This document shows positions 865 to 33,208 of a stretch of DNA of 64,000 bases, one piece after another; position 1 is the first letter of the stretch, and the number at the start of each line of letters is the position of its first letter. The translations under genes were made by a program, and so were the position numbers. Source of the DNA: Macrostomum hystrix. Taxonomy: Eukaryota; Animalia; Platyhelminthes. The stretch lies in assembly GCA_950097015.1 (NCBI GenBank), contig CATNEN010000038.1, positions 25,606,001 through 25,670,000 on the forward strand, written 5' to 3'. The notes under the pieces were generated by a model. That model made no database searches. It was not told the DNA's origin and saw only the letters and a list, made by a program, of their open reading frames with translations.

Positions 865-3108
865 TCAGATGTACATCATCAGCTTGAGAAAGTTGTCCTG
901 CTTCATAGCCTCCTTGGTCTTGATCATGGCTTCGTAGGTTGTAAAGGCGGTCCTCATTCGCACCGCCAGCAGGATGAAGTCCTCGAAGCACACGCTGCCC
1001 TTTACAGGGTCGGTATAGCGCATAGCAACCGTTTCAAACACCTTGTTGCAGAGATTGTATCCGGCTGCCTTCAGGGCGTCGCGCAGCTCAAAGGAGTCAA
1101 AAGAACCGTTGCAGTCTGCGTCCTTCTCTTTGAAAATGGTCTTCAGGAGGCGGATCTGGTTCCACAGCATCTTAAATTCGTCAAACTCCATGTAGCCAGA
1201 CATGTTCAGATCCATAAGGGCGAGCATGCTGCGACAGGCTTCAGCGCTGAAGCCGGTGAAATCTTTCACCTCGCGACCGAACGACCGGTTGAGAATCTGC
1301 TGCAGCTGGAAGGCGTGAATGCGACCTGCCCCGCCAGAGAAACCATGAAAAGCCTGGCGCAGAGGCTCCTCGTTCTCCGCGGTGCTGACAGGCGCTGTGA
1401 TTGCCGACCTCACCTCCTCCATCTTGTTCTCCGTGTCCAGCACGCTAGACAGGTTGGGCTTCTCTGAGAAGATGCGCAGTATGAACCTAGCCTCTTCATT
1501 CGGATTGAACGTCGATGGTATGATCGCGTAGTGTCCCGGGGGCAGTTTGTGCCGACCGCTGACTTCTCTCTGGTTGACGAAAGCAGACTTGTCTGTCTGA
1601 CGATTGTAACGGAAGAATTTCTGATCCAATGGACCGTCACTCTGCTCCCGTAGCTGATAAATGGCGTAACCAATAGTAAAGTACTCGCCACCGACTGTTA
1701 GTTTTCGCACATCCTTCTGCATCAGGCCGACAATTATAGTGCCAAGGTTCTCGTCGTCCGAATCGTCTGGGTCAACAATCTCTACGCGGAACTGCTGGTT
1801 CGTGTGAAAGCTGTCGATAAAGTTTCTGCAGCCGCCGGCGCTCACGTTTCGCTTCCACTCGCCCTTCTCCAGGCACATTTCCCAACGGCGTTTCTTGGCA
1901 GCTGCGCCAGTTAAGCTGCTGGACATGGACTCTGGACTGAGATGGCAGATCTCTAGCTTAGTGAACTCTTGCACAAAGTCCATGTAGGCCATCCAGAACT
2001 CCCCGTCGTCACCTGCGTCCATTTGTAGTCGCGCCTTCTCATCCGCACTGACATCGTTCCACTTGGAACTGCGATCGCTCCAGTCGCCCTTCCACTCGCA
2101 CTCGTTGCCCCACGGGTTGCGAACTCGCACCAGAGCCTCTTCCTGGCCGTTTTTCAGCTTGCAGTTGCGCACATCGGTCACTGAATAGGCGTGCCCGGTG
2201 ATCAAACCGTTGTCCAGATGGCCCTCAATCTGTTCGCTCTCGATACTGCAGCCCATCAGAGACTCGCTCTTGTTAGCCTGGAACATAACGTTGAACAGGT
2301 CGGCTGGCGCCTTGTTCAAATCGAAGTTCTCACATAAACCACCGGTGAAATCCTCCATAGCTTCTGACTGGCTTCCGCCAGCGAGAGCCTCATAGCTGCC
2401 GTTGACCTTAGCATAGGCCTTCTCAAGTAGAGCCGACCAGAACTCATTGCGGTCCTGGCTGCGCATAAAGCACAAACGACCTGACTTTGTGGGAAGCCTG
2501 TCATCGATTACCACCTCCTTCCAGCGGCCAAAGTGCCAGAACCGGAAGCGGAACATGCCGCAGTAGCCGGAACCGAAGTCCTGATCATGTGGCACTACCC
2601 GCTCAAACAGTGTCCGATGCATCGAAAGAGAAGCAATTGAAGCCAGAAGCCAGCAGTCACCAAGTTCGCCCTGCTTAACGTCGAACCGGCTAACGCCATC
2701 GCTAATGAACATCGGCGACTGGCAGATTTCCTTTGGACGCTTCCACACGTACTTATCATTAGGCCGGTTAGGAAACAAGCTGCGACCATTAGCTGGGAAA
2801 TCTGGATCTTCGTACAACTCTTTAGCTTGCACGTGCTTCCTTCTTAGCTCTTCAAAGTTGATCTTGGTTACGATAGCGCTCTGCTGGCTGTTAGCGGAGG
2901 CGACTAACGCACGAGGCGACTTGTTGGAGGACCCAGATGAAGGAGTTACCGAAACGGCCGGCTTCGACGTCGCGTGTTGCCGAGCCTGCGACTGAGCCTG
3001 CAGCTGTTGCTGCGGCCGCTCCTGCTGAGCTGCTGGTTTCTGGGTGGCCGCTGCCTTGGAATCACCTTCCGTGTTTAGGTACTCGCGCACAATTTGAACA
3101 CGCGACAT
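865..3108 (-). CDS. Classical calpain (CysPc, C2-like and penta-EF domains), single exon, 747 aa
   Basis: Catalytic triad motifs QGELGDCWLLAS, GHAYSVT and RNPWG. Domain III GGCRN...IIPSTF. EF hands DLNMSGYMEFDEF and DADCNGSFDSFEL. Confidence 0.97.
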   Translation of the reverse strand: MSRVQIVREYLNTEGDSKAAATQKPAAQQERPQQQLQAQSQARQHATSKPAVSVTPSSGSSNKSPRALVASANSQQSAIVTKINFEELRRKHVQAKELYEDPDFPANGRSLFPNRPNDKYVWKRPKEICQSPMFISDGVSRFDVKQGELGDCWLLASIASLSMHRTLFERVVPHDQDFGSGYCGMFRFRFWHFGRWKEVVIDDRLPTKSGRLCFMRSQDRNEFWSALLEKAYAKVNGSYEALAGGSQSEAMEDFTGGLCENFDLNKAPADLFNVMFQANKSESLMGCSIESEQIEGHLDNGLITGHAYSVTDVRNCKLKNGQEEALVRVRNPWGNECEWKGDWSDRSSKWNDVSADEKARLQMDAGDDGEFWMAYMDFVQEFTKLEICHLSPESMSSSLTGAAAKKRRWEMCLEKGEWKRNVSAGGCRNFIDSFHTNQQFRVEIVDPDDSDDENLGTIIVGLMQKDVRKLTVGGEYFTIGYAIYQLREQSDGPLDQKFFRYNRQTDKSAFVNQREVSGRHKLPPGHYAIIPSTFNPNEEARFILRIFSEKPNLSSVLDTENKMEEVRSAITAPVSTAENEEPLRQAFHGFSGGAGRIHAFQLQQILNRSFGREVKDFTGFSAEACRSMLALMDLNMSGYMEFDEFKMLWNQIRLLKTIFKEKDADCNGSFDSFELRDALKAAGYNLCNKVFETVAMRYTDPVKGSVCFEDFILLAVRMRTAFTTYEAMIKTKEAMKQDNFLKLMMYI

Positions 3109-3832
3109 TTCTTATCCTTCGTTACCTTTCGAGCAAGTGTATCAGATTCGGAGTGGGCTCCCTCGAGTCCACCCCTCAGTTTCTATCAAATTTATAGCCC
3201 GTGAGCCATGCCAAATTTCAAATGGGCTAAACGAATGCCATAACGCTATTGAGAAAATACTCCAGGGCGCAGCATGAAAAGCTTCGCAGCCCATTGTTCT
3301 GGACTGTCTTTTGCTTCGACCCTCAACGTCTGTCCCAATAAAATACTCGTATAAGCGCCTAACACTATCTTGCAGTCACAAAACAATGTACATTTCGCGA
3401 CTGTGGGTCGCGTTTACTCTCGTTTTGTTAATGCTTAATTGTCTATTGTTTGGCAATGGCATCAAGTGGTAATAAAGGCATCTATGTGCCGCGGCTTGCA
3501 GCTGCATGTATTTAATCAGAACAAATGCATCTTTTAAATTAAAAAATTACCTCTGCTATCAACCTGGATGGAAAAGTTGCTTTTATCGTTAAAAAATATT
3601 TTAACTAGACGCTTCAATTAACTTAAAACCTTATAGACTACTTAGTAATAATTTATTCAGATTCCTGATGGAAAGTTAAATTAAAAACGATGTTAAGACA
3701 TTAACTCTCATTGAATGTTAAGGTTATTTTATTTTAGTATTTAGTATAATATTCCGAAACACCAATTAAAGTCCCAACTGCAGCGGAAAAAGCGCATACA
3801 TTTTTGCCGAGATTGCTTGCAACTCAAGGTTT

Positions 3833-6800
3833 CTAGGCAAATTGCCGCTTCTTGTCACCGTAGATCGAGCCAGAAGGGTAAGAGCCAAAGTTTTCAGCTG
3901 TGTAGGATCCATAGCTAGTTGGAAACGATCCGTAGCTATCGTAGCCGAAAGAACCAAAGCTTTCAGAAGGATATGATCCATAGCTATCGTAGCCGAACGA
4001 ACCAAAGCTTTCAGAAGTAAAAGATCCGTTGTCGAAGCTTCCCTTAAAGTAGCCCGGGAACGAGGAGCCATAGTTCCTCTTCTTGAACGAACTGCCGGCA
4101 TCAAAGTAGGAAGGGTTGCCGCTGCTGTAGTACGACGGAAGGCTGTCAAAGCCGCTGCTGTAGTACGACGGAAGGCTGTCGAAGCTGCTGCTGTAGTACG
4201 ACGGACGGCTGTCGAAACTGCTGCTGTAGTAAGATGGAAGGCTGTCGAAACTGCTGCTGTAGTTCGACGGACGGCTGTCGAAACTACTGCTGTAGTACGA
4301 CGGACGGCTGTAAAAACTGCTGCTGTAGTACGACGGACGGCTGTAGAAACTGCTGCTGTAGTACGACGGAAGGCTGCTCTTGAAGTAGCTACTCGGGAAC
4401 GAGGAGCCATAGTTCCTCTTCTTGAACGAACTGCCGGCATCAAAGTAGGAAGGGTTGCCGCTGCTGTAGTACGACGGAAGGCTGTCAAAGCCGCTGCTGT
4501 AGTACGACGGAAGGCTGTCGAAGCTGCTGCTGTAGTACGACGGACGGCTGTCTAAACTGCTGCTGTAGTACGATGGACGGCTGTCGAAACTGCTGCTGTA
4601 GTTCGACGGAAGGCTGCTCTTGAAGTAGCTACTCGGGAACGAGGAGCCATAGTTCCTCTTCTTGAACGAACTGCCGGAATCAAAGTAGGAAGGGTTGCCG
4701 CTGCTGTAGTACGACGGAAGGCTGTCAAAGCCGCTGCTGTAGTACGACGGAAGGCTGTCAAAGCCGCTGCTGTAGTACGACGGACGGCTGTCAAAGCCGC
4801 TGCTGTAGTACGACGGACGGCTGTCGAAGCTGCTGCTGTAGTACGACGGACGGCTGTCAAAGCCGCTGCTGTAGTACGACGGACGGCTGTCGAAACTGCT
4901 GCTGTAGTACGACGGACGGCTGTCGAAACTGCTGCTGTAGTACGACGGACGGCTGTCGAAACTGCTGCTGTAGTACGACGGACGGCTGTCGAAACTGCTG
5001 CTGTAGTACGACGGAAGGCTGCTCTTGAAGTAGCTACTCGGGAACGAGGAGCCATAGTTCCTCTTCTTGAACGAACTGCCGGCATCAAAGTAGGAACGGT
5101 TGCCGCTGCTGTAGTACGACGGAAGGCTGTCAAAGCCGCTGCTGTAGTACGACGGAAGGCTGTCGAAGCTGCTACTGTAGTACGACGGACGGCTGTCGAA
5201 ACTGCTGCTGTAGTACGATGGACGGCTGTCGAAACTGCTGCTGTAGTTCGACGGAAGGCTGCTCTTGAAGTAGCTACTCGGGAACGAGGAGCCATAGTTC
5301 CTCTTCTTGAACGAACTGCCGGCATCAAAGTAGGAAGGGTTGCCGCTGCTGTAGTACGACGGAAGGCTGTCAAAGCCGCTGCTGTAGTACGACGGAAGGC
5401 TGTCAAAGCCGCTGCTGTAGTACGACGGACGGCTGTCGAAGCTGCTGCTGTAGTACGACGGACTGCTGTCGAAGCTGCTGCTGTAGTACGACGGACGGCT
5501 GTCGAAACTGCTGCTGTAGTACGACGGAAGGCTGCTCTTGAAGTAGCTACTCGGGAACGAGGAGCCATAGTTCCTCTTCTTGAACGAACTGCCGGCATCA
5601 AAGTAGGAAGGGTTGCCGCTGCTGTAGTACGAGGGAAGGCTGTCAAAGCCGCTGCTGTAGTACGACGGAAGGCTGTCGAAGCTGCTACTGTAGTACGACG
5701 GACGGCTGTCGAAACTGCTGCTGTAGTACGATGGACGGCTGTCGAAACTGCTGCTGTAGTTCGACGGAAGGCTGCTCTTGAAGTAGCTACTCGGGAACGA
5801 GGAGCCATAGTTCCTCTTCTTGAACGAACTGCCGGCATCAAAGTAGGAAGGGTTGCCGCTGCTGTAGTACGACGGAAGGCTGTCAAAGCCGCTGCTGTAG
5901 TACGACGGAAGGCTGTCAAAGCCGCTGCTGTAGTACGACGGACGGCTGTCGAAGCTGCTGCTGTAGTACGACGGACTGCTGTCGAAGCTGCTGCTGTAGT
6001 ACGACGGACGGCTGTCGAAACTGCTGCTGTAGTACGACGGACGGCTGCTCTTGAAGTAGCTACTCGGGAACGAGGAGCCATAGTTCCTCTTCTTGAACGA
6101 ACTGCCGGAATCAAAGTAGGAAGGGTTGCCGCTGCTGTAGTACGACGGAAGGCTGTCGAAACTGCTGCTGTAGTACGACGGACGGCTGTCGAAACTGCTG
6201 CTGTAGTACGACGGACGGCTGTCGAAACTGCTGCTGTAGTACGACGGAAGGCTGCTCTTGAAGTAGCTACTCGGGAACGAGGAGCCATAGTTCCTCTTCT
6301 TGAACGAACTGCCGGCATCAAAGTAGGAAGGGTTGCCGCTGCTGTAGTACGACGGAAGGCTGTCAAAGCCGCTGCTGTAGTACGACGGAAGGCTGTCAAA
6401 GCCGCTGCTGTAGTACGACGGAAGGCTGTCGAAGCTGCTGCTGTAGTACGACGGACTGCTGTCGAAGCTGCTGCTGTAGTACGACGGACGGCTGTCGAAA
6501 CTGCTGCTGTAGTACGACGGACGGCTGCTCTTGAAGTAGCTACTCGGGAACGAGGAGCCATAGTTCCTCTTCTTGAACGAACTGCCGGCATCAAAGTAGG
6601 AAGGGTTGCCGCTGCTGTAGTACGACGGAAGGCTGTCAAAGCCGCTGCTGTAGTACGACGGAAGGCTGTCAAAGCCGCTGCTGTAGTACGACGGACGGCT
6701 GTCGAAGCTGCTGCTGTAGTACGACGGACTGCTGTCGAAGCTGCTGCTGTAGTACGACGGACGGCTGTCGAAACTGCTGCTGTAGTACGACGGAAGGCTG

Positions 6801-7219
6801 CTCTTGAAGTAGCTACTCGGGAACGAGGAGCCATAGTTCCTCTTCTTGAACGAACTGCCGGAATCAAAGTAGGAAGGGTTGCCGCTGCTGTAGTACGACG
6901 GAAGGCTGTCGAAACTGCTGCTGTAGTACGACGGACGGCTGTCGAAACTGCTGCTGTAGTACGGGTAGCCCTTGCTGGAGCTGCTCTGGTAGGATGGATA
7001 GCTAGTTGCGGAGTTGTAGCCCCCACCGAGCGAAGAAGACCCGGGCGCATAGCGCCTAGCAATTAGTGGTTTCTATAATAAAATAATTTGATTGAAGTCT
7101 GTTTTTTTTAAGGTGAGACAAGTGAGAAATATCTTAAAGGCACATGTTTTCAGTCTTACCGCATCGGCGATGGCCGAAACCAGAAGCAACAGGACTGTTA
7201 TTAGGCAATGAATGCGCAT
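3833..7219 (-). CDS. Secreted Ser/Tyr-rich repeat polyprotein, join(7219..7160,7072..3833), about 1099 aa
   Basis: Exon 1 is the signal peptide MRIHCLITVLLLLVSAIADA, followed by a GTAAG donor, an 87-nt intron and a TATTATAG acceptor in phase 0. Exon 2 is 3240 nt and open: KPLIARRYAPG...(SSSFDSRPSYY)n...FKKRNYGSSFP...DKKRQFA*. TATAAA at 7321-7326 and AATAAA near 3730. Confidence 0.88.
4060..6965. repeat. Coding 33-bp tandem unit within higher-order modules of 108+33n bp
   Basis: Unit gctgctgtagtacgacgga(c/a)ggctgtcgaaact. Spacing between the 11 KKR-encoding blocks is 207, 240, 273, 339 or 405 bp. Confidence 0.95.
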
Positions 7220-7881
7220 GTTGCTTCAGTTCAGATTTGTTTCAAATGGCTTCGATTAGGCAAGTAACGCTGAATAACCAGCAGTTTGTTAATTGTCTGA
7301 TTGATTTGGTTTGCTTCAATTTTATATCCTCAGCCTGTGATTGCACAGCTGCGTGAGGCGCCATTCTAAAATGGATTTTTTGCTGAAGTTGCTTCTCCAT
7401 TCAATTATTTCAATTAGCACCTTGAGAAATAAAATGCATAGCTCCAATTGAGGTGCGCTTAATCAGCAGCAAATCAGCTCTTCGACTAATTGATTTCGCA
7501 GCAAGTGTCATTTAGAGTTTGTTTGCTAAGCAATCATCAAGTACACGCGCCTGCTTCTGTAAGCAACTTTTTCCAAGGCATTTTTATTGAATTTTCCACA
7601 AAACCACAGAACAAAGTTTGGGACACCTGTCATGAAGCAAATAAGGCTATTATTTGCACTTGAAAAACTTCTGTTTTGGGAAGTATTGTTAGCTACTAAT
7701 ATTTAATTTATTATTCGCTCCATTCCCAGCTGTATTTGTTGTACGAAGCAATGAATTTAGCCTTCATTTGGATAGATTAAAAGGACATGATGTCTGTCTA
7801 TAAGTGAAAAAAACCTTTGAACTATGATTGCGGCTGTGTTTACATGTTTTTTATCATGTCTCAAGCTAATGTCTCACTCAA

Positions 7882-8155
7882 ATCACCTACAGTTTCATGA
7901 GGCTCTCATCTGTCGGAGGTCAGTCTTATCACCTACAGTTTCATGAGGCTCTCATCTGTCGGAGGTCAGTCTTATCACCTACAGTTTCATGAGGCTCTCA
8001 TCTGTGGGAGGTCAGTCTTATCACCTACAGTTTCATGAGGCTCTCATCTGTGGGAGGTCAGTCTTATCACCTACAGTTTCATGAGGCTCTCATCTGTCGG
8101 AGGTCAGTCTTATCACCTACAGTTTCATGAGGCTCTCACCTCTCACCTGTCGGAG
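7882..8155. repeat. 46-bp tandem repeat, about 6 copies
   Basis: Unit atcacctacagtttcatgaggctctcatctgtcggaggtcagtctt. Confidence 0.95.
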
Positions 8156-8858: not shown

Positions 8859-9112
8859 TAATCACTAAAGCAATAATTACATAAGCTAGGGTAAGCAATT
8901 GAACTGTTCAATTCTAATTAGCATTGGTAGGCAAAAACATATTAGTAATTTCTACAAATCAAGGCGCAAGATCTAAAGGGCAGGCACATTGAAAGACACT
9001 CACTATTGTAACTTAAGTCTAATTTTCAGATTGAAAAAAGTAATAAGCATTTCTAAAATTAAGAAAGCGGCAGACAAGTAACCGTATTGGATGAGTTTCT
9101 TCTTGGCTAACA

Positions 9113-10015
9113 AATTGGTTGGTTGAACCTCCCATTGGTTAACGAGTTGATTGGTTGAACCTCCCATTGGTTAACGAGTTGATTGGTTGAACCTCCCATT
9201 GGTTAACGAGTTGATTGGTTGAACCTCCCATTGGTTAACGAGTTGATTGGTTGAACCTCCCATTGGTTAACGAGTTGATTGGTTGAACCTCCCATTGGTT
9301 AACGAGTTGATTGGTTGAACCTCCCATTGGTTAACGAGTTGATTGGTTGAACCTCCCATTGGTTAACGAGTTGATTGGTTGAACCTCCCATTGGTTAACG
9401 AGTTGATTGGTTGAACCTCCCATTGGTTAACGAGTTGATTGGTTGAACCTCCCATTGGTTAACGAGTTGATTGGTTGAACCTCCCATTGGTTAACGAGTT
9501 GATTGATTGAAACTCCCAATGGTTAACGAGTTGATTGGTTGAACGTCCCATTAGTTAACGATTTGATTGGTTCAACATCCCATTGGTTAAAGATTTGATT
9601 GGTTGAACCTCCCATTGGTTAAAGATTTGATTGGTTGAACCTCCCATTGGTTAAAGATTTGATTGGTTCAACCTCCCATTAGTTAACGAGTTGATTGGTT
9701 CAACCTCCCATTGGTTAAAGATTTGATTGGTTGAACCGCCCATTGGTTAACGAGTTGATCGGTTTAACCTCCCATTGGTTAAAGATTTGATTGGTTGAAT
9801 CTCCCATTGGTTAAAGATTTGATTGGTTCAACCTCCCATCAGTTAACGAGTTGATTGGTTCAACCTCCCATTGGTTAAAGATTTGATTGGTTGAACCTCC
9901 CATTGGTTAACGAGTTGATCGGTTTAACCTCCCATTGGTTAAAGATTTGATTGGTTGAATCTCCCATTGGTTAACGATTTGGTTAACAATTTAATTGGTT
10001 GAATCTCCTAATTGG
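9113..10015. repeat. 32-bp minisatellite, about 28 copies
   Basis: Unit ttggttgaacctcccattggttaacgagttga. Homogeneous on the left, degenerate on the right. Confidence 0.95.
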
Positions 10016-10431: not shown

Positions 10432-11094
10432 TTAAGCATCGGCCATAATCTCCAACAGGAATAATATTATCCGTCCAATCTGCACAAACAACTGATAGAG
10501 AAATGACCCGGCAGTTTCTGAGTCGTTCTCAGTTCGACTGTGAGACTGTCCAGACTGGTACTTGCTGTCAAACTTATCGGAACTGCTCAACTTGGCCTGC
10601 ATGTCCAGCTCATCTCTTATCCTACTGTAGTCGTCCAATAAGGCGTCGTGTCTATACAATTCCAGCGCAAAGCTGGTATTTTCGCAGCACTGCGGAGAGG
10701 CGTAAATCATTGCCGATATGGGGGCAAGAACATCGTCAGGGACAAACACCAGGTCCAATGATAAGTTTTCACTTTTCAGCTCGTATTCCTTCAGACTGGG
10801 ATCTTTGCCAAAGCCGGACACGTATAGATCCGCGTCTCCTTGCAGAGAGTGCAGCACTAGCAACAATGGCGGCTTCTGATCAAATCTCACTAGACTGAAC
10901 TGGCCGCTATCAAGGTGCCCAGTGTATCGCTTCACTAATCGACCAGTAGATAGAAGATATTGGACAAAGCCCTCTGTCATAATGTGGGTAGTTGCTACGC
11001 GATCAACTCCGCAAGTTAGTAGACTGAGAATCAGGGCTGGCAATAGTAAGGCTAGTAGTGAAGACATTGGTTGGCGAGCTGTGAGGCGAGACAT
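10432..11094 (-). CDS. C6orf120: UPF0669 / C6orf120-like protein, 220 aa
   Basis: N-terminal signal-like hydrophobic stretch, LHSLQGDADLYVS...P...YELKS motif, and a C-terminal hydrophobic tail (ILFLLEIM). Confidence 0.8.
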   Translation of the reverse strand: MSRLTARQPMSSLLALLLPALILSLLTCGVDRVATTHIMTEGFVQYLLSTGRLVKRYTGHLDSGQFSLVRFDQKPPLLLVLHSLQGDADLYVSGFGKDPSLKEYELKSENLSLDLVFVPDDVLAPISAMIYASPQCCENTSFALELYRHDALLDDYSRIRDELDMQAKLSSSDKFDSKYQSGQSHSRTENDSETAGSFLYQLFVQIGRIILFLLEIMADA

Positions 11095-13344: not shown

Positions 13345-13830
13345 AGGGGTTGGTTGGCGGCACGATCAAAGGAAAGATAAGGTGGATTGTGGAAGGATGT
13401 GGTTGGTTGGCGGCACGATCAAAGGAAAGATAATGTGGATTGTGGAAGGATGGTGTTGGTTGGCGGCACGATCAAAGGAAGGATAGGGTGGATTGTGGAA
13501 GGATGGGGTTGGTTGGCGGCACGATCAAAGGAAAGATAAGGTGGATTGTGGAAGGATGGGGTTGGTTGGCGGCACGATCAAAGGAAAGATAGGGTGGATT
13601 GTGAAAGGATGGGGTTGGTTGGCGGCACGATCAAAGGAAGGATAGGGTGGATTGTGGAAGGATGGGGTTGGTTGGCGGCACGATCAAAAGACTGATAATA
13701 TGGATTGTGAAAGGGTCGGCACGATCAAAGAACTGATGAGGTGGACGGAGGGGGTTGGTTGGCCGCACGATCAAATAACTGATGATGTGGATGGAGGGGG
13801 TTGGTTAGCGGCACAATCAAAGCAAAAACC
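13345..13830. repeat. 53-bp G-rich tandem repeat downstream of ENKD1
   Basis: Unit ggggttggttggcggcacgatcaaaggaaagataaggtggattgtggaaggat. About 7 good copies plus degenerate ones. Confidence 0.9.
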
Positions 13831-17911: not shown

Positions 17912-20900
17912 TTAGTCACATTTAACCGACAACACTTGCACCACGGCATCCACCATTGATTCGTGCAGGCTGCATGCCTCATCGCAAGGCTCCAGTTTAA
18001 CTAGCCAATTGCTATTCAGACGATTCCAAAGCGTAGATTTTTTGGCTAGCAACGGCTTAGCAACCGACTCTTTTTCCTGGTCGCAATCTTTCAATTGAGG
18101 ATGGGTGAGCAGTGCCGAGTCAGCGAGTTGATAGTCGCCCCAATACCTGACAAAGGTGCACTGCTGAACATGCCGCTGTATATCGGCAAGCAGAAGCTCA
18201 TTGGCTGCTCGGTCCATCACGGACAAGCAGTCACTAGCCGCATCCCAGTGCCTATGATCCCACTGGAACTGCGGATAGTCCAGAGCTGCCGCCGACAGCG
18301 TGAATGCCGCCGCAGCTGCTGTCACCTCCGCATCGCCGAATCGCGCAGGGGAACACTTGGCTTGGCCTGGCAAACGTCGGACAATGTCTTCGACAAGGCT
18401 CAGAGCTTCTGGCGAGTCGGGGCAGAGTTGGGCGAAGTTCCACCGAGCTCGAATGGTCTGGAAATGTTAAATTATGGATCATTTAAAACTTCGCAGAAGA
18501 AACGAAAATAACTTTCAGGAATACTTTAGGTTTTAAAAACACAATGGGATATTTTGAAACTTTATGGAATATTTTGAAAACTCAATGGGATATTATGAAA
18601 ACTCAATGGGATATTATGAAAACTCAATGGGATATTTTGAAAACTAAATGGGATATTTTGAAAACTAAATGGGATATTTCGAAAACTCAATGGGATATTT
18701 CGAAAACTCAATGGAATATTTTAAAAAGTCAATGGGATATTTTGAAAACTCAACGGAATATTTTGAAAACTTATTGGGATATTTTGAAAAACTCGATGGG
18801 ATATTTTGAAAACTCAATGGGATATTTAACTCAATGTGATATTTTAAAAACTTAATGAGATATTTTGAAAACTCAATGGGATATTTTGGAAACTCAATGG
18901 GATATTTTGGAAACTCAATGGGATATTTTGGAAACTCAATGGGATATTTTGAAAACTCAATGGGATATTTTGAAAGCCGCACAGTAATATCGCACTAACC
19001 TTATCATACATGCGTCGGCGATCGAAGGCGTCAATGAGATTGCGCTCAGTCGCACACTCATCGAAGCTATCAGCATCCGGTTCTGAATCTGGGTCGCGCG
19101 CCTCATTCTTAACCAGCGAATCACACGCATTTGTCAGTTCTTTGGCTAGCAACCGATGCGCGTTCGGGTTGCCGGGAAATTTACTAGCATACTCCGTTAG
19201 CAAATGTTCCAGGCGTCTGAAACTGTGCTCTCGGCTAGACTCGGAGGCTGGCAAGTGACTACCATGGTAGCATCTTCTAGTGCTTGAAATCTTAGCAAAG
19301 CCTTGGACAAAGATATCGTAAATATCCGCTTCAGCATTGCAGGCTGTTGAATATTCGCCACTACTACTGCAAGTAGTCCAACTGGAAATGATATCAGGCA
19401 GATTGCTCAGATATTCTTCTGCTCTATTCAGGTGATAATCATCTTCAAATTGTCGACTGGCTATTTGAGATTGGCACAATGGATCGTCCGAGCTTTCCGT
19501 TGAATCGCGCTTTCTCTTTCTCTGCCTACTAGCGCCCATTGTTTGCTGCCAAGCGGCTAGCTGAGCCAAGCCAAGGTAGAGCTGACTCAAACGGCTACAG
19601 CGCAGAGACTCAGGTGACGCGGCCACACCCTGACGGCTGGGGTCGCGCACAGTGAATAGAGAAAACAGACTGTCCCATCGATGCTGGCTGGCGAAGTACA
19701 GTTGTACCTGACCAGTGGTTAGGCGAGTAACATTATTTTGAACCTGAGTCTATACTCAACCTGAGTCTATACTGAACATGAGTCTATACTGAACCTGAGT
19801 TTATAGTCAACCTGAGTCTATACTGAACCTGAGTCTATAGTCAACCTGAGTCTATACTGAACCTGAGTCTATACTGAACCTGAGTCTATACTGAACCTGA
19901 GTCTATACTGAACCTGAGTCTATACTGAACCTGAGTCTATACTGAACCTGAGTCTATACTGAACCTGAGTCTATACTGAACCTGAGTCTATAGTCAACCT
20001 GAGTCTATACTGAACCTGAGTCTATACTGAACCTGAGTCTATACTGAACCTGAGTCTATACTGAACCTGAGTCTATACTGAACCTGAGTCTATACTGAAC
20101 CTGAGTCTATACTGAACCTGAGTCTATACTCAACCTGAGTCTATAATGAACCTGAGTCTATACTCAACCTGAGTCTATACTCAACCTGAGTCTATAATGA
20201 ACCTGAGTCTATACTCAATCTGAGTCTATACTCAACCTGAGTCTATACTGAACCTGAGTCTATACTGAACCTGAGTCTATACTCAACCTGAGTCTATACT
20301 CAACCTGAGTCTATACTCAACCTGAGTTTATGAAATTCTGCTGAAATGGCATCTGGAGATCAGGGAATCTGCTTAAATGGTACCCGAGGATCTAGGAATC
20401 TTCCTAAATTGCACCTGGGGATCAGGGAATCTTCCTAAATGGTACCTGAGGATCTAGGAATCTTCCTAAATTGCACCTGGGGATCAGGGAATCTTCCTAA
20501 ATGGCACCTGAAGATCTTGGATTTCAATCCTATGGCCCTCACCTGCAGCAGCATATTCTGCTTGTCTGGCACTGTTAGGCGGCGCAAAGCGGCAATGAAC
20601 TGGTTGAGTAGTTGGTGCTCTGAATGTCTGGCTAGCAAATGCAGAGAGCAGCGCCACAGGATGGCAGGACAGGGCTTGCCGTGCATTATGTACCGCAGCA
20701 GCAACTTAGTAGCTCGACTGTACCTGCCTCTGTGCAGGTCGTCCACAATGCCCAGGACTAGCACGGCTGCGTGAGAGCACCTGAGGATGCGGGCGGGAAG
20801 ACTGTATATTAGAATTATGCGATATTGTGTGTTGGATTAACCAAATGGGATATTGTGTGTTGGATTAAACAAATGGGATATTGTGTGTTGGATTAACCAA

Positions 20901-21740
20901 ATGGGATATTGTGTGTTGGATTAACCAAATGGGATATTGTGTGTTGGATTAACCAAATGGGATATTGTGTGTTGGATTAACTAAATGGGATATTGTGTGT
21001 TGGATTAACTAAATGGGATATTGTGTGTTGGATTAACCAAATGAGATATTGTGTGTAGGATTAACCAAATGGGATATTGTGTGTTGGATTAACCAAATGA
21101 GATATTGTGTGTAGGATTAACCAAATGGGATATTGTGTGTTGGATTAACTAAATGGGATATTGTGTGTTGGATTAACCAAATGAGATATTGTGTTTTGGA
21201 TTAACTAAATGGTATATTGTGTGTTGGATTAACCAAATGAGATATTGTGTGTTGGATTAACTAAATGGTATATTGTGTGTTGGATTAACTTAGTGGGATA
21301 TTGTGTGTAGGATTAAGATAGTGGGATATTGTGTGTAGGATTAACGTAGTGGGATATTGTGTGTAGGAATAACATAGTGGGATATTGTGTGTAGGATTAA
21401 CGTAGTTGGATATTGCTTGTAGGATTAAACCAGTAGCATATTATGCGTAGGATATAGTCTTTGTGCAGTTGCCAACCTGGGCAGGAACCGCATATCTCCG
21501 GTGACATTGAGTCGAGCATAGTTGGAGCCGCCAAGCATCGGGTTGAGCATCTCGGATTTGCCGCATTCGCTGATGCCGCCAGAGCTAGCTAGCAGCAATG
21601 CCGCCGCAACCCTGCGAAGCCGACGAAGCCGAACCTCCCTGATCGACTCGTCATCCGCTACGGCGTCAACCTCGTCGGCACTGCCAGTGCCAGTCAACAG
21701 AAAGCGAGACCAAAGCCTCTCCTTCTGTTCTTCGAGTGAC
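17912..21740 (-). CDS. TAF1A: TAF1A (TAFI48, SL1/TIF-IB subunit)-like; exons ~21740..21477, 20780..20543, 19707..19000, 18457..17912; start codon unresolved
   Basis: LTEYASKFPGNPNAH resembles vertebrate LTNYAYDEKFPSNPNAH; also YDIFVQGF and ALDYP...W. GT-AG junctions keep frame (phases 2, 0, 0). Confidence 0.72.
18540..18975. repeat. 21-bp minisatellite in TAF1A intron 3
   Basis: Unit tcaatgggatattttgaaaac. Confidence 0.95.
19740..20330. repeat. 17-bp minisatellite in TAF1A intron 2, followed by a ~31-bp repeat at 20335-20520
   Basis: Unit gaacctgagtctatact. Second unit approximately atcagggaatcttcctaaatggcacctgagg. Confidence 0.95.
20820..21428. repeat. 28-bp minisatellite in TAF1A intron 1
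   Basis: Unit gggatattgtgtgttggattaaccaaat. Confidence 0.95.
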
Positions 21741-22104: not shown

Positions 22105-22545
22105 GAGTACATTTAGGGGTAGAGAGGTCTAGGGTTGGCTTGAAATTAGTGTATATTTAGGGGTAGAGAGATCTAGGGTTGCATGGCTTGTAACTAGTGT
22201 ACATTAGGGGTAGAGAGATTTAGGGTTGCATGGCTTGTAACTAGTGTACATTTGGGGTAGAGAGATCTAGGGTTGCATGGCTTGTAGCTAGTGTACATAA
22301 GGGGTAGAGAGATTTAGGGTTGCATGGCTTGTAACTAGTGTACATTTGGGGTAGAGAGATCTAGGGTTGCATGGCTTGTAACTAGTGTACATTAGGGGTA
22401 GAGAGATCTAGGGTTGCATGGCTTGTAACTAGTGTACATTTGGGGTAGAGAGATCTAGGGTTGCATGGCTTGTAACTAGTGTACATTTGGGGTAGAGAGA
22501 TTTAGGGTTGCATGGCTTGTAACTAGTGTACATTTGGGGTAGAGA
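22105..22545. repeat. 47-bp intergenic minisatellite
   Basis: Unit tttggggtagagagatctagggttgcatggcttgtaactagtgtaca. Confidence 0.95.
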
Positions 22546-22680: not shown

Positions 22681-24072
22681 TTAATCTGTTCCCTCCATCA
22701 TCTGTTGAATGACATGCCTTAGCACCACTTTGTAGTCTCGACTGTACTGTACTGTCGAAACTTTACGACGCTTTCTAGAAGCTCGCTGCGCCGTCACCGA
22801 AGTGGAACCAAGAGAATCAGCTCCTTTATTAGACAACGACAAGCTAGACATCCTGGCTTCTTTCCGAATTCGCTTCAATCTTTTACGAACCTGACGCTCA
22901 GTAGCTGCGATGGCTTCTTCAGCATCCGTGGTCGAAGACGCTTCGATTGGCGGTAAGGACGAAGCTTGCTGGGGCATTGTTGGCTGCACTTCGGTCTTTC
23001 CTGCCAGTGTCAAGCCGGCCTCAGTCCAGCCCAACTGTTCTAGAGCTGAATGAAACAGAGATTCGCATTCTTTCACTAATTTAGACAACTCAATCGCTTC
23101 AGGTGTGGCGTGCTCAAGCAGTGATTGCTGGGATGCATGCTGCTTCGGCTGCTGCTCCTGGAAGATTTGTTTCAGTAGCAACGAGAAATTAACAATTGCC
23201 GACAAATGCTTAAGCTAAAATATAAAATGGCAGCTGCGATTCTGACTGCTAACCCTGCTGCGATTCTGACTGCTAACCCTGCTGCGATTCTGACTGCTAA
23301 CCCTGCTGCGATTCTGACTGCTAACCCTGCTGCGATTCTGACTGCAAACCCTGCTGCGATTCTGACTGCTAACCCTGCTGCGATTCTGACTGCTAACCCT
23401 GCTGCGATTCTGACTGCTAACCCTGCTGCGATTCTGACTGCAAACACTGCTACGATTCTGACTGCTACCCCTGCTGCGATTCTGACTGCTAACCCTGCTG
23501 CAATTCTGACTGACTGCTAACCCTGCTGCGTTTCTGACTGCTAACCCTGCTGCGATTCTGACTGTCAACCCTGCTGCGAGGATGACTGCTAAAACCCCGC
23601 TGCGATTCTGACTGCTAACCCTCCTGCGATTTTGAAGATATAAACATCTGATTTAAAAAAAATGAATTTTTTTTCAGTAGTCTCCATTTTTTCATTCTAA
23701 GAATTGATGTTAGTAAAAACTGCCAAAAAGGCACAATAGAAAACTATTTTACTGGTATGTACTTTTAACTGTCGCACAAAAAATTCCAGACGACACTACT
23801 ACTAGTAAGTAGCTCGTACCTTAAAAGCTCAAAGAGCAACTGGACAGATAAAAAACTTTTGGACGGAATGTGAAGCAAGAAAAAACGTTACAAAATCATT
23901 GAAATTTCAAAGAACAATGCGCTGCACCATTGCTTACTTCGAAGTACTTTTGTGGAACAGCAATACAAACAGATGCAACAAACTCGGGTAGAAAAAAGTT
24001 AACATTTTAGAAAATTTAACTTTTTAAGCAAGGCAAAAATGCTTTTAAACTAACTGCCAGTTCCGATTCCAT
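22681..24072 (-). CDS. SNRNP48 (U11-48K)-like protein; probable join(24072..24055,23157..22681), about 164 aa
   Basis: ELSKLVKECESLFHSALEQLGW and RKRRK...DYKVVLRHVIQQMME resemble the N-terminal helix (ending LGW) and C-terminal KRRR...YTEVIRDVI..HME of SNRNP48. Exon 1 (MESELA, GTTAGT donor) is tentative. Confidence 0.55.
23230..23632. repeat. 24-bp intronic minisatellite
   Basis: Unit ctgctgcgattctgactgctaacc. Confidence 0.95.
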
Positions 24073-24429
24073 TGAAGCGTAAATTAAAATGATTACTACA
24101 TTTTTCTATTGTTTGTTTTAGGTTGGAAAAACAAAAATATGGCAAACAGCGATTTGTTTTTTATTTAGAAAATCGGTTAAACCGAGGTTACACTTGAGAA
24201 TGAAAATGAAGATAAAGATTTTCAAGGAATTCGGGTTAATTTGGCTGAGCTATTTAGAAAGTAGGTAAAAACAGAAGTCTGGGTTATTATTTATAAAATA
24301 ATATTCAATAATTGAGACGGTTTGGGATCACAGATTTGAAAGTTGGGATTTTAGACCATTTGGAGACTTTAAGGAGCTTGGAATGTCAGTTAGGGATTTC
24401 ATGTAGTTTTGGGCGATAAGACAGGCTAG

Positions 24430-24925
24430 GATTTCCCACAGTTCAGCATTTCTCACAGTTTGGGATTTCTCACAGTTTGGGATTTCTCACAGTTTAGGAT
24501 ATCTTACAGTTTGGGATTTCTCACAGTTTGGGATTTCTTACAGTTTGGGATTTCTCACAGTTTAGGATTTCTCACAGTTTAGGATTTTAACAGTTTGGGA
24601 TTTGTCACAGTTTGGGATTTCTCACAGTTTAGGATTTTAACAGTTTGGGATTTCTCACAGTTTGGGATTTCTCACAGTTTGGGATTTTAACAGTTTGGGA
24701 TTTCTAACAGTTTGGGATTTCTCACAGTTTGGGATTTTTCACAGTTTGGGATTTCTCACAGTTTGGGATTTTAACAGTTTGGAATTTCTAACAGTTTGGG
24801 ATTTCTCACAGTTTGGGATTTTTCACAGTTTGGGATTTCTAACAGTTTGGGATTTCTAACAGTTTGGGATTTCTAACAGTTTGGGATTTCTAACAGTTTG
24901 GGATTTTTCACAGTTTGGGATTTCC
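24430..24925. repeat. 16-17-bp minisatellite just 3' of DNAAF4
   Basis: Unit tttgggatttctcacag. Confidence 0.95.
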
Positions 24926-31138: not shown

Positions 31139-33208
31139 TTAGTCATCGCGACGCTGAAAAATCAAGTTGTGCGGTCCGGGCGAGTGTACCACTCCGCCGC
31201 CAAAGCGCCTGATCTCTTCTAGTCGACTTCGCTCGCTCTCCGGAATGCTGATGCGAAAGGCCTGCATCAGGGACACGGCAAACAGGAACAGCTCCATCCG
31301 CGCCAGGCTCTCTCCGAGGCAAGAGCGCTTGCCGATGGAGAATGGAATAACTTGCTCAGATGGACGAAACTTTCCCGCAGCATCCATGAATCTGTCCGGA
31401 TTGAAGGCATTCGGCTCGGGAAAGCTTGTGGCATCGAAGTGTACAGCTTGGAGATTAGCTATCACCACCGTGTCCTGAAGATGGAAAGTGGGTTTGAGAG
31501 TTTAACTGAGAACATGTTATAAAAAAATTGTATGTGCTAAAATATTTACACAAGGGTCGCCACCACCACTGGGGGCACTTCCAAGGGCGGCCGCTAAACA
31601 CACACGCACATATACCGTACGCCAAACTCACACAGGGTGTGACATCTGCCCTGAATTTATCATCGTCAGGCGGTGTGCACTCACCCTGTGCCTCGATGGA
31701 GGTTAGCCGTCATTGGGCAGGAATTGAAGGACAAGCCTACAGGAGCTAAGCCTTCTCAGCGCGGCTGCGTCCCAAATGAATGTGCATGGCCTCACCACGT
31801 ATTCGAGCTCAGAGAGTTAATACGGTGCCCTTAAATGACACGCTCACCTTTGGAATGAAGTAGCCGAGCAGCTCCGCGTCAGCCGTGGTCCTGTGCGGCA
31901 CACCGGTGGGCACCAGGGTGTAGTAGCGCTGCGCCTCCAGCAGGAAGGCCTCGATAAGTGGCAGGTTTGGTCGGTCTGCCATCGCAGGCGGCCGGTCGCC
32001 CAGATGGTCCCGAATGTAGGCAGCCAAGCGTTCCTGCAGCTCCGGATTAAGGGCCAGGTGAAGAGCTATCCAGCGCAGACTGTTGGCCGTGGTATCCGTG
32101 CCAGCAACGAAAAGATCGGCTATGCTCACCTGAGAGGTAATTTGATGAGTAGATCATTTTGATTTTTTTGTGCACAATACACAAAGTGGATCGACTGGCG
32201 GAGCGGTTACACACTCCGGGGTCTGCCGAAACGGCACAATCGAATCTCTTAAGTATCTTATTGTACTGAATTGTCGCCTATTGTGGGTAGCATGAACAAC
32301 ATCTAAACAGCAACCTGCAGATTCTTGTCGCTGAGGTGCGCCTTCGCCTCTGCCGGTGCGTCAGCTAGCCGTTGCCGCTCAGCCAGGAAGGCTTCTATGA
32401 AGTCGCGAGGCTCGTCTGCCGTATTGTAGCCAGCCTGCTTGGCGTCGATCTGGCTCTGGCAGAAACTGAACACGGACTCAAAGAGACCGATCATCTTCTT
32501 GGGAAATGGCAAGTTCAGCACGCGCTCCGGTGACAGCAGTCGTTGAACTGCCATCGCAATCGTTAAGCTTGGCTTTCTAGAATCCATCGAACCCTGCGTG
32601 ATCTTGTTGATAAGGTTCAGCTTCTCCTCGAAGGTTGGATCTTCATCGGCAACTCGGCTGCCAAACACCAGACTGCAGATGACGTTAGACACGGCCTTGT
32701 TGAATGGCACCGACGTTGACGTCGGTTGTCCATTGGCCGACTCCAGTGTCGTCACCAGCTCCTGCGCCTCGCGGGTGATTGTCTCCTCCGAGCCGGACTT
32801 GCCGAATCCGAAATCGCGCAACGCGTGCAGACTGAAGCGCCTCAATTCCTTCCACTTCGGCCCGTCCCCAGCTAGGAAGCCGCTGTTGTCCATGACCTTA
32901 GTCGTGAACAGGTTCACCTGCCGACCGGAGAAGTCGCCTGACTGCGCCAGAAACGCCTGCCTGACCGCTTCGTAGCTGTTCAGGACGCAGATTCGTCTAC
33001 CATCCAACACGAAGGTGCAAATTTGGCCGTACATTTGCGGAGTCTTGAGAATCCAACGCCGCATGGGGAATTCCATCCACAATGTGCTGCCGAAAATCGG
33101 AATCGACGGCGGACCCGGGGGCAGCTTAGCGGACGCTCGGAGCTTCGTCAATAGTAGGTAGCCCAACAGAGCCGCCACAACTGCTATGGCTATGCTCAGC
33201 AGGTCCAT
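31139..33208 (-). CDS. Cytochrome P450, CYP2 clan, join(33208..32315,32129..31848,31474..31139), 503 aa
   Basis: N-terminal anchor plus LPPGP, WKELR, I-helix AGTDTT, EAQR, PDRF and the heme motif FSIGKRSCLG. Both introns are phase 0. Confidence 0.96.
31550..31812 (-). mobile_element. Degenerate SINE family A in CYP intron 2
   Basis: Reverse-complement matches to gagctcgaat, tttgggacgcagccgc and ctgacgatga...cagggcagatg. Confidence 0.65.

What the first reader, a model, noticed from the sequence alone, without database searches (positions are those of the whole stretch)
3833..7219. Hidden secreted Ser/Tyr-rich polyprotein, apparently cut at KKR sites into about 12 repeat peptides
Seen: the RRTTAA frame in the ORF track is wrong. 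Another minus-strand frame is open for 3240 nt, has no Met, and splices in phase to a 20-aa signal-peptide exon. The layout is signal peptide, KPLIARR, modules of (SSS/GFDS[R/L]PSYY)n + GNPSYFD[A/S]GSSF, 11 internal FKKR|NYGSSFPSSYFKSS junctions, a GSFGYDSY tail and a terminal DKKR|QFA. Many differences between units are synonymous in this frame (ccg/cca/ccc, agc/agt, ttc/ttt). The change that creates a TAG in the track frame is missense here. Established: KR/KKR sites are prohormone-convertase/furin-type targets; Tyr-rich secreted proteins are DOPA- or dityrosine-crosslinked in flatworm eggshells and marine glues; [S/G]Y[S/G] low-complexity sequences self-assemble. Inference: this is a prohormone-like precursor that releases 69-135-aa building blocks for a glue, cement, eggshell, rhabdite or seminal secretion.
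Basis: partly seen in the sequence, partly recalled or inferred. Interest (0 to 1): 0.88.

Follow-up and report, generated by a model that had tools for sequence, protein, structure and literature searches.

The report
Flatworm secreted Ser/Tyr-rich repeat polyprotein
What looks like a 33-base minisatellite in the flatworm Macrostomum hystrix is the main exon of a real, spliced, expressed gene with no known relatives, encoding a secreted, unstructured serine/tyrosine-rich protein of 12 modules separated by Lys-Lys-Arg sites; it is probably cut into pieces that serve as an extracellular building material, but neither the cutting nor the tissue has been shown.

Summary
On the minus strand, a 20-codon ATG/signal-peptide exon (7219-7160) joins in phase, across an 87-nt GT..AG intron, to a 3240-nt stop-free exon (7072-3833). 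RNA contigs from two independent studies carry exactly this junction, and none covers the intron or the upstream DNA.

The 1079-aa product is 38% Ser and 16% Tyr. It lacks Cys, His, Met, Val and Trp, and AlphaFold2 predicts it to be disordered (pLDDT 31). It consists of 12 modules of 69-135 aa, each ending in KKR, followed by a final QFA. Besides one N-terminal RR, these KKR are its only multibasic sites.

The genome is the published M. hystrix assembly. The gene is single-copy there and has no detectable homologue in any database searched.

Cleavage at KKR and a structural role (glue, eggshell, cement or mucus) remain inference. They are plausible: the terminal KKR lies outside the repeats, removing KKR turns a slightly basic precursor into acidic peptides, and the genome encodes convertases and tyrosinases. 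An uncleaved 120-kDa matrix protein is a serious rival.

The tissue of expression is unknown. The scan had listed this same stretch once before (s1-854585), with no follow-up.

The parts
7320..7326 (-). TATAAAA, a possible TATA box about 50 nt upstream of the furthest RNA contig end
   Evidence: Read from the sequence. RNA contigs reach 7272 and none lies at 7300-7800. Promoter function is inferred.
7220..7272 (-). 5' UTR (the minimum seen in RNA); it contains no upstream ATG
   Evidence: The X5 contig reaches 7272 and the X6 contig reaches 7250. There is no ATG in 7272-7220. A at -3 gives a good start context.
7160..7219 (-). Exon 1 coding part: the 20-aa signal peptide MRIHCLITVLLLLVSAIADA. 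It has a basic n-region, a hydrophobic core, and Ala at -3 and -1, and it ends exactly at the exon boundary.
   Evidence: The signal-peptide call is made by rule from the sequence; no SignalP was available.
7073..7159 (-). Intron, 87 nt, GT..AG, phase 0
   Evidence: Joint 7072/7160 ('skips 87', CT..AC on the + strand). It is seen in an X6 contig (217 nt, 0 mismatches, depth 125) and in an X5 contig from a sediment metatranscriptome (151 nt). Intron bin 7096-7129 has depth 0 in all four runs.
3833..7072 (-). Exon 2: 1079 codons plus TAG (3835-3833), the whole mature protein
   Evidence: RNA contigs cover 6790-7072.
7052..7072 (-). KPLIARR: a 7-aa N-terminal stretch ending in the only RR site, a possible propeptide
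6839..7051 (-). Rest of module 0, after KPLIARR: a partly unique N-terminal part (YAPGSSSLGGGYNSATSYPSYQSSSSKGYPYY), then 2 repeat units, GNPSYFDSGSSF and KKR
4076..6838 (-). Modules 1-10 (91, 91, 69, 91, 80, 91, 80, 135, 80 and 113 aa). Each reads NYGSSFPSSYFKSS, then 3-9 copies of the 11-aa unit [L/R]PSYYSS[S/G]FDS, then GNPSYFD[A/S]GSSF and KKR. The KKR codons lie at 6847-6839 (this one closes module 0), 6574-6566, 6301-6293, 6094-6086, 5821-5813, 5581-5573, 5308-5300, 5068-5060, 4663-4655, 4423-4415 and 4084-4076.
   Evidence: Modules of equal length differ by 0-3 nt. The two-module block 4+5 differs from 6+7 by 3 of 513 nt.
3845..4075 (-). Module 11 (the tail): NYGSSFPGYFKGSFDNG..., two copies of (S/P)ESFGSFGYDSYGS, then ...SIYGD and KKR (3853-3845, AAG AAG CGG)
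   Evidence: KKR arises in only 194 of 200,000 shuffles of the tail. The Arg codon here (CGG) differs from that of the linkers (AGG).
3836..3844 (-). C-terminal tripeptide QFA, after the last KKR
3652..3733 (-). 3' UTR stretch with two AATAAA signals (3733-3728 and 3657-3652)
   Evidence: Use of these signals is not verified by reads.

Best explanation
This is a real, transcribed, two-exon gene of Macrostomum hystrix with no detectable relatives.

Shown:
- Its mRNA is spliced at 7160/7072.
- The first AUG opens a reading frame for a classical signal peptide followed by a 1079-aa protein. That protein is Cys-free, predicted to be disordered, 38% Ser and 16% Tyr, and built from 11-aa PSYYSS[S/G]FDS[R/L] units.
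- The units are grouped into 12 modules. Every module ends in the tribasic site KKR.

Inferred:
- The protein enters the secretory pathway.
- In secretory granules a kexin/PC1-PC2-type convertase cuts after each KKR, and probably after the N-terminal RR. A carboxypeptidase then removes the basic residues.
- This would yield about 12 acidic peptides (pI 4.1-4.8, about 7.4-14.9 kDa) starting NYGSSFP... and ending ...GSSF, from a precursor with a net charge of about +12.
- The peptides, or the uncut protein if cleavage is partial, would act as extracellular material, not as signals. Candidates are a glue, egg cement or eggshell, mucus or another gland secretion.
- Cohesion would come from the dense Tyr/Phe/Pro content (pi-stacking, possibly DOPA or dityrosine made by the genome's tyrosinases). 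The Ser runs are possible sites of phosphorylation or O-glycosylation.

My estimates: gene and secreted repeat protein about 0.9; cleavage at KKR about 0.5-0.6; a structural rather than signalling role about 0.7; the specific tissue is unknown.
For: Gene model and frame.

Splice and RNA:
- The splice is seen in RNA contigs of two independent studies.
- One X6 contig has 0 mismatches across the junction; the X5 run is recorded as metatranscriptomic RNA-Seq.
- The intron and the 500 nt upstream are uncovered in all four runs.

Coding frame:
- GC3 and codon choice in this frame match the neighbouring calpain gene.
- All module length differences are multiples of 33 nt, whereas most other minisatellites nearby are out of frame.

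Protein properties:
- Composition, and the restriction of multibasic sites to module ends.
- AlphaFold2 gives pLDDT 31 and no secondary structure.

The terminal KKR:
- It lies in non-repeat sequence.
- It is improbable by chance (about 0.001).
- It uses a different Arg codon from the linkers.

Charge: the precursor has K+R = 81 against D+E = 69, and the trimmed modules have pI 4.1-4.8.

Machinery in the genome:
- At least 7 loci with the convertase P-domain and about 3 tyrosinase loci.
- The neighbouring 29-copy peptide gene, of which 23 exact WLSGAFRN copies were re-read here, uses KR sites. Multicopy precursors with dibasic sites therefore occur in this genome.

Organism: the assembly size and contig number are identical to the published M. 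hystrix assembly.
Against: - There is no peptide-level evidence of cleavage and no tissue or stage information.
- FKKR lacks the P4 Arg of furin-type sites, so a constitutively secreting gland cell might not cut it.
- The junctions are identical because the modules are very recent duplicates (0-3 nt apart). Their conservation therefore says nothing about selection.
- Lys occurs only in and next to the junctions, which would equally fit cross-linking or charge patches in an uncut protein.
- No orthologue was found, so no comparative test of the KKR sites was possible.
- Only the 5' 480 nt of the transcript were checked against RNA contigs; the tail and the stop codon were not.
- The signal peptide was judged by rule, not by a predictor.
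Confidence: 0.55

Rival explanations
1. This rival keeps the same gene and the same secreted protein, but holds that it is not cut. It would then be a single 120-kDa disordered matrix, glue or mucin-like protein. The Lys-rich junctions (FKKR...YFK) would be spaced cross-linking or charge patches (Lys-quinone or electrostatic), and the Ser runs would carry glycans or phosphate.
For: - All Lys residues sit in or next to the junctions. Quinone tanning of flatworm eggshell precursors involves tyrosinase acting on Tyr-rich proteins (PMC3499410; PMC5544531).
- FKKR has no Arg at P4, so furin-type enzymes of constitutive secretion may ignore it (read from the sequence, plus the established furin R-X-K/R-R consensus).
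- Junction identity is explained by recent duplication.
Against: - An exposed tribasic site in a fully disordered secretory protein is a good substrate for PC1/PC2/kexin-type enzymes, and the genome has several.
- A KKR three residues from the C-terminus, and an RR seven residues from the mature N-terminus, have no obvious cross-linking rationale but are typical trimming sites of precursors.
Confidence: 0.3
2. This rival sees a signalling-peptide (prohormone) precursor. The active product would be small, for example the 11-mer NYGSSFPSSYF lying between KKR and the next single Lys (10 copies). The Ser/Tyr repeats would be acidic spacers.
For: - KKR|NYGSSFPSSYF|K is invariant in 10 modules.
- A classical multicopy neuropeptide precursor with KR sites lies about 10 kb away on the same strand.
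- Acidic spacers are common in neuropeptide precursors (established knowledge).
Against: - There is no Gly before the basic sites for amidation.
- Monobasic Lys cleavage is uncommon.
- The 'spacers' make up about 85% of the protein. They are highly regular and vary in copy number, which is unlike known prohormones.
- The invariance of the 11-mer is explained by recent duplication.
- No similarity to any known peptide family was found.
Confidence: 0.08
3. This rival holds that the transcript is real but the repeat is not translated as proposed. It would be a transcribed minisatellite or non-coding RNA, or the assembly's repeat number or frame would be wrong.
For: - The genome is full of minisatellites that are open in several frames.
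- Two other frames of this array are open for 836 codons.
- The RNA contigs are fragmented inside the repeat.
Against: - The first AUG of the spliced RNA, in a good context, opens a canonical signal peptide that joins in phase to the only frame open from 7072 to 3833.
- GC3 is 0.79 in that frame only.
- All indels are multiples of 33 nt.
- The non-repeat N-terminal and tail parts are open in the same frame.
Confidence: 0.04

Closest known systems
Kex2-processed repeat proteins of fungi, especially Ustilago maydis Rep1 (repellents)
   Same: Both have a signal peptide followed by tandem near-identical units, each ending in a basic kexin-type site. In Rep1 the released peptides (about 37 aa) are structural: they coat the hyphal wall and form amyloid-like fibrils (PMC6339444).
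   Different: There is no sequence relation, and the organism is an animal, not a fungus. The units are 2-4 times longer, of variable length, and Ser/Tyr-rich rather than amphipathic. The site is KKR rather than KR. Cleavage is unproven here.
Neuropeptide or prohormone multicopy precursors (e.g. the WLSGAFRN x29 gene about 10 kb away in the same genome)
   Same: A signal peptide, repeated units bounded by di- or tribasic sites, a short C-terminal remnant after the last site, and a single large repeat exon that looks like a minisatellite.
   Different: The products would be 66-132 aa rather than 3-40 aa. There is no amidation Gly, the units are internally repetitive and vary in copy number, and the composition is that of a structural low-complexity protein.
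Trematode eggshell precursor proteins (Schistosoma p14, p19, p48; Fasciola vitelline proteins)
   Same: Secreted, Tyr-rich, repetitive flatworm proteins that tyrosinase cross-links. Tyr is 11-26% in p14, p19 and p48 (PMC3499410) and 16% here. The GYDSYGS tail recalls Gly/Tyr/Asp repeats, but that resemblance is from memory and was not tested.
   Different: Gly is only 6% here (against 10-44%), Ser is 38%, and there is no His. There is no sequence similarity in any search. The trematode proteins are not polyproteins with basic sites.
Acidic poly-Ser/Tyr cement proteins of sabellariid tubeworms (Pc-3, Sa-3a/b)
   Same: Secreted, acidic, very Ser-rich proteins with interspersed Tyr. In the tubeworm the Ser residues are phosphorylated and the proteins form a coacervate cement together with basic DOPA proteins (PMC12817120).
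   Different: There is no homology. Ser content is lower here and Tyr, Phe and Pro are higher. The regular 11-aa units and KKR module boundaries are absent from Pc-3. Phosphorylation is untested here.
Animal structural or carrier polyproteins (profilaggrin; nematode polyprotein allergens)
   Same: About 10-12 tandem units of 10-37 kDa are made as one precursor and released at linker sites (tetrabasic sites in the nematode proteins).
   Different: Profilaggrin is cytoplasmic and has an S100 head. The nematode units are folded helical lipid binders. Here the units are disordered and the protein is secreted.

Membership tests
Convertase-processed multicopy precursor (prohormone-like polyprotein) | N-terminal signal peptide | tested here: met
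   MRIHCLITVLLLLVSAIADA has a basic n-region, a 13-residue hydrophobic core and an A-x-A cleavage motif. This was judged by rule; no SignalP was available.
Convertase-processed multicopy precursor (prohormone-like polyprotein) | Repeated units each flanked by di- or tribasic sites | tested here: met
   There are 12 KKR sites, one at each module end, plus one RR, and no other multibasic sites.
Convertase-processed multicopy precursor (prohormone-like polyprotein) | Cleavage at those sites shown in vivo | not testable with these tools
   This needs peptidomics or a Western blot. Only the presence of convertase P-domain loci in the genome was shown.
Neuropeptide precursor in the strict sense | Short products (about 3-40 aa), often with a Gly amidation signal, and neuronal expression | tested here: not met
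   The trimmed modules are 66-132 aa and the residue before KKR is Phe or Asp, never Gly. The expression site is untested.
Furin-type substrate | R-X-[K/R]-R consensus (Arg at P4) | tested here: not met
   The sites read S-F-K-K-R and G-D-K-K-R, so P4 is Phe or Asp.
Trematode eggshell precursor families p14/p19/p48 | Sequence homology, or a Gly+Tyr-rich composition (Gly 10-44%) | tested here: not met
   No hits in any protein search. Gly is 6.2% and Ser 38%, against the values in PMC3499410.
Trematode eggshell precursor families p14/p19/p48 | Expression in vitellocytes or oocytes, and tyrosinase-dependent cross-linking | not testable with these tools
   Tyrosinase loci exist in the genome.
Mucins | Pro/Thr/Ser-rich tandem repeats flanked by Cys-rich domains (VWD, C8, CK or SEA) | tested here: not met
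   Thr is 0.4% and the mature protein has no Cys. There is no Pfam domain.
FUS-like [G/S]Y[G/S] low-complexity domains | Many [G/S]Y[G/S] triplets | tested here: not met
   There are only 3 such triplets. The dominant motif is PSYY, 59 times.

The most novel reading that the evidence does not exclude
A flatworm may make an extracellular biomaterial by the prohormone route. One transcript would give a slightly basic, soluble precursor that is packed into granules. Convertase cleavage and removal of 12 KKR triplets would switch it to about 12 acidic, Tyr/Phe-dense, disordered peptides of 7-15 kDa. These would condense or cross-link into glue, egg cement, eggshell or mucus. That would be an animal counterpart of the fungal Rep1 repellents, arisen de novo from a 33-nt minisatellite within the genus Macrostomum.
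Probability: 0.3. Interest if true: 0.75.

Novelty: new variant of a known kind. Interest (0 to 1): 0.52.

Why it matters
- **Annotation.** A stretch that any repeat masker or ORF caller would treat as satellite DNA, or read in the wrong frame, is an expressed gene with no known relatives. A second multicopy precursor lies about 10 kb away, so coding minisatellites may be a recurrent source of new secreted proteins in Macrostomum.
- **Biomaterials.** If the KKR sites are used, this would be a rare animal example of a structural material made by polyprotein processing with a built-in charge switch. That is of interest for bioadhesion and eggshell biology, for which Macrostomum is a model.
- **Gene birth.** The gene could serve as a tractable case of gene origin and rapid repeat turnover.
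- **If the protein is not cut.** It is then one more taxon-restricted, low-complexity secretory protein, which is useful for annotation but ordinary.

Tried and rejected
Homologue and similarity searches:
- Pfam on exon 2: no family.
- Word-indexed search of 5.8 billion proteins with exon 2, with the tail module and with the N-terminal module: nothing.
- Full phmmer against 1.84 billion representatives: 90 hits. All inspected ones are unrelated period-11 repeats aligned to residues about 680-800. I rejected them as composition and periodicity artefacts.
- Metagenome contig scan: 199 pattern matches, none confirmed.
- ESM Atlas: no usable hit.
- Own-genome six-frame search: only the locus itself. 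The 110 weaker matches are unrelated minisatellites, so there is no paralogue family.

Structure:
- AlphaFold2 on a single sequence gave no fold, so I ran no fold search.

Reads:
As the tool suggested, I laid only 6790-7800.

Literature:
- Searches for a described Macrostomum Tyr-rich, cement, eggshell or rhabdite protein found none like this.
Full report
**What is in the sequence**

I read window 3600-7500 on the minus strand. It shows:
- an ATG at 7219 with A at -3;
- 20 codons, MRIHCLITVLLLLVSAIADA;
- a GTAAG donor at 7159;
- a TTATTATAG acceptor ending at 7073;
- from 7072, a frame that runs 1079 codons without a stop or a Met to TAG at 3835-3833.

Splitting the translation after every KKR gives KPLIARR, then 12 modules of 78, 91, 91, 69, 91, 80, 91, 80, 135, 80, 113 and 77 aa, and a terminal QFA.

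Modules 1-10 share one plan: NYGSSFPSSYFKSS, then three to nine 11-aa units ([L/R]PSYYSS[S/G]FDS), then GNPSYFD[A/S]GSSF-KKR. The last module keeps NYGSSFP and then changes to a GSFGYDSYGS-type tail ending DKKR-QFA.

Tandem Repeats Finder reports the 33-nt period and higher-order periods of 240 and 273 nt, which equal 80 and 91 aa.

The mechanical ORF at 4552-7062 (the 'RRTTAA' frame) ends at a TAG (4554-4552). In the Ser/Tyr frame the same change is a Phe-to-Leu change.

**Is the frame more than chance?**

Openness alone is not evidence. Two other frames of the array are open for 836 codons, and this genome is full of minisatellites that are open in several frames. Four things single out the Ser/Tyr frame:
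- It is the only frame that joins in phase to an ATG/signal-peptide exon.
- It is the frame with coding-like codon bias. GC3 is 0.79, against 0.28 and 0.58 in the other frames, and the preferred codons (AGC, TAC, TTC, GAC, AAG, AAC, GGC) match those of the calpain gene next door, whose GC3 is 0.675.
- All module length differences are multiples of 33 nt. Most of the roughly 17 other arrays in the window have periods of 14, 16, 17, 23, 28, 31, 32, 46, 47, 53 or 55 nt.
- The non-repeat N-terminal part and the tail are open in it.

Of the 12 distinct single-base variants of the 33-nt unit, 6 are synonymous in this frame, against 4 and 2 in the other frames. Modules of equal length differ by only 0-3 nt.

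**Transcript evidence**

Nine public runs from three studies hold parts of the stretch.
- A 217-nt contig of run X6 (depth 125, no mismatch) covers 6948-7072 and continues at 7160-7250.
- A 151-nt contig of run X5, recorded as a sediment metatranscriptome, covers 7035-7072 and continues at 7160-7272.
- Both skip exactly the predicted 87 nt (CT..AC on the plus strand, which is GT..AG on the minus strand).
- No run has a contig in the intron centre or anywhere in 7300-7800, so these are RNA-derived data.
- The transcript starts between about 7272 and 7300, about 25-50 nt downstream of a TATAAAA at 7326-7320.
- There is no ATG in the known 5' UTR.
- Runs X1 and X3 hold only repeat and junction contigs.

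Two AATAAA signals follow the stop (3733 and 3657).

**Organism and context**

The window's genome has 220,453,370 bases in 42 contigs. That is exactly the published Macrostomum hystrix assembly (Table 1 of PMC10468722), in agreement with earlier notes of this scan.

Neighbours in the window:
- a calpain gene, 865-3108, minus strand;
- a UPF0669 gene, 10432-11094;
- a P450 exon, 32303-33208;
- a retrotransposon pol, 60547-63117.

About 10 kb beyond the window start, on the same strand, lies the multicopy WLSGAFRN precursor reported earlier. I re-read it: its copies are separated by plain KR. The two genes are unrelated in sequence.

**The protein**

- Composition: Ser 38%, Tyr 16%, Phe 9.7%, Pro 8.4%, Gly 6.2%, Asp 6.1%; no Cys, His, Met, Val or Trp.
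- Size: 120.5 kDa after the signal peptide.
- AlphaFold2 (single sequence) gives a mean pLDDT of 31 and no secondary structure. This is consistent with an intrinsically disordered low-complexity protein, although a single-sequence model is weak evidence.
- The only multibasic sites are RR at residues 6-7, eleven GSSFKKR|NYGSS sites and GDKKR|QFA.
- All other Lys residues are single and sit in YFKSS or YFKGS just after the junctions, apart from the N-terminal Lys of KPLIARR and one in SSSKGYP in module 0. Single Arg residues sit in DSRPSYY.
- The precursor has 81 basic and 69 acidic residues. After removal of KKR, modules 1-11 have pI 4.1-4.8 and masses of 7.4-14.9 kDa.

**Relatives**

None were found:
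- Pfam;
- three word-indexed searches, with the whole exon, the tail and the N-terminal module;
- a full phmmer scan of 1.84 billion representatives, whose hits are unrelated 11-residue repeats;
- a metagenome scan;
- the ESM Atlas.

In its own genome the gene is single-copy. The modules are almost identical at the nucleotide level, and a two-module block (91+80 aa) is duplicated with 3 differences in 513 nt. The array is therefore young and still turning over by unequal exchange.

**How it most likely works**

Shown: a spliced mRNA whose first AUG encodes a canonical signal peptide, followed by a disordered Ser/Tyr-rich protein with regularly spaced KKR sites.

Inferred: secretion; cleavage after KKR (and RR) by a PC1/PC2/kexin-type convertase; trimming by a carboxypeptidase; and use of the resulting acidic Tyr-rich peptides as extracellular material.

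For cleavage:
- The sites are tribasic and lie in disordered sequence.
- One KKR lies in the unique tail, three residues from the C-terminus. It is unlikely by chance (194 of 200,000 shuffles) and uses CGG where the linkers use AGG, so the amino acids are kept over a nucleotide difference.
- An RR lies seven residues from the mature N-terminus.
- The genome encodes at least seven convertase P-domain loci.

Against cleavage:
- P4 is Phe or Asp, not Arg, so furin-type enzymes are unlikely to act.
- The identity of the junctions is explained by recent duplication.
- Lys confined to the junctions would equally suit cross-linking in an uncut protein.

I put cleavage at 0.5-0.6.

A structural role is favoured by the size, composition and internal repetitiveness of the modules and by the lack of an amidation Gly. 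Tyrosinase genes exist in the genome. Flatworm eggshell precursors are Tyr-rich substrates of tyrosinase (PMC3499410; PMC5544531). However, this protein is Ser-rich and Gly-poor, unlike p14, p19 and p48. Which secretion it belongs to cannot be decided with these tools.

**Comparison with what is known**

- In function, the nearest analogue is the fungal Kex2-processed repeat protein Rep1, whose released peptides are structural (PMC6339444).
- In architecture it resembles multicopy prohormones.
- In chemistry it recalls trematode eggshell precursors and the acidic Ser/Tyr cement proteins of tubeworms (PMC12817120).
- It is a sequence member of none of these. It fails the defining features of strict neuropeptide precursors, furin substrates, mucins, FUS-like [G/S]Y[G/S] domains (only 3 such triplets against 59 PSYY) and p14/p48.

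I therefore class it as a new variant of a known kind: a secreted repeat polyprotein.

**Limits and compliance**

- I never joined the two exons for any search or fold. Exon 2 was always given by reference.
- No step had to be referred.
- The scan had already listed this same stretch once (s1-854585), with no follow-up.

Noticed in passing
window 7882-8138, 9103-9981, 13346-13714, 18531-18975, 19739-20331, 20817-21428, 22107-22545, 23233-23635, 24429-24924, 33832-35288, 36050-36756, 37688-38755, 39057-39757, 40495-41049: The window carries a dense series of unrelated minisatellites (periods 14-55 nt, 5-90 copies, 86-99% matches). Most periods are not divisible by 3. The block at 34-40 kb has a strong strand asymmetry (GC skew -0.42 to -0.55).
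   Followed up: partly
window 865-3108 (-): An intronless 747-aa classical calpain (Peptidase_C2, Calpain_III and EF-hands) lies immediately downstream of the repeat gene on the same strand. Only about 550 nt separate the repeat gene's second AATAAA (3657-3652) from the calpain ATG.
   Followed up: partly
window 60547-63117 (-): A long ORF with RT, RNase H and integrase domains: the pol of an LTR retrotransposon. I observed it only.
   Followed up: no
L013 (G000:C38:25594000-25600500), minus strand: I re-read the multicopy precursor reported earlier. It has 23 exact WLSGAFRN copies plus variants (WLSEAFRN, WLSGSFRN, WLSGVFRN, WLFGAFRN). Nearly all copies are separated by KR, and one KI looks like a lost site.
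   Followed up: partly
runs X1, X3 (organisms A, B) on window 6790-6960: Runs labelled as two other organisms hold near-identical repeat and junction contigs but nothing from 6994-7272. Either they are the same or a very close species with an unassembled 5' end, or a relative shares the repeats but not exon 1.
   Followed up: no
run X5 on window 7035-7272: A sediment metatranscriptome contains the spliced 5' end at 95-99% identity. M. hystrix or a close relative was therefore alive and expressing this gene in that natural sample.
   Followed up: no
window 10432-11094 (-) and 32303-33208 (-): A UPF0669 (C6orf120-like putative cytokine) ORF and a cytochrome P450 exon. They are ordinary neighbours with no obvious link to the repeat gene.
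   Followed up: no
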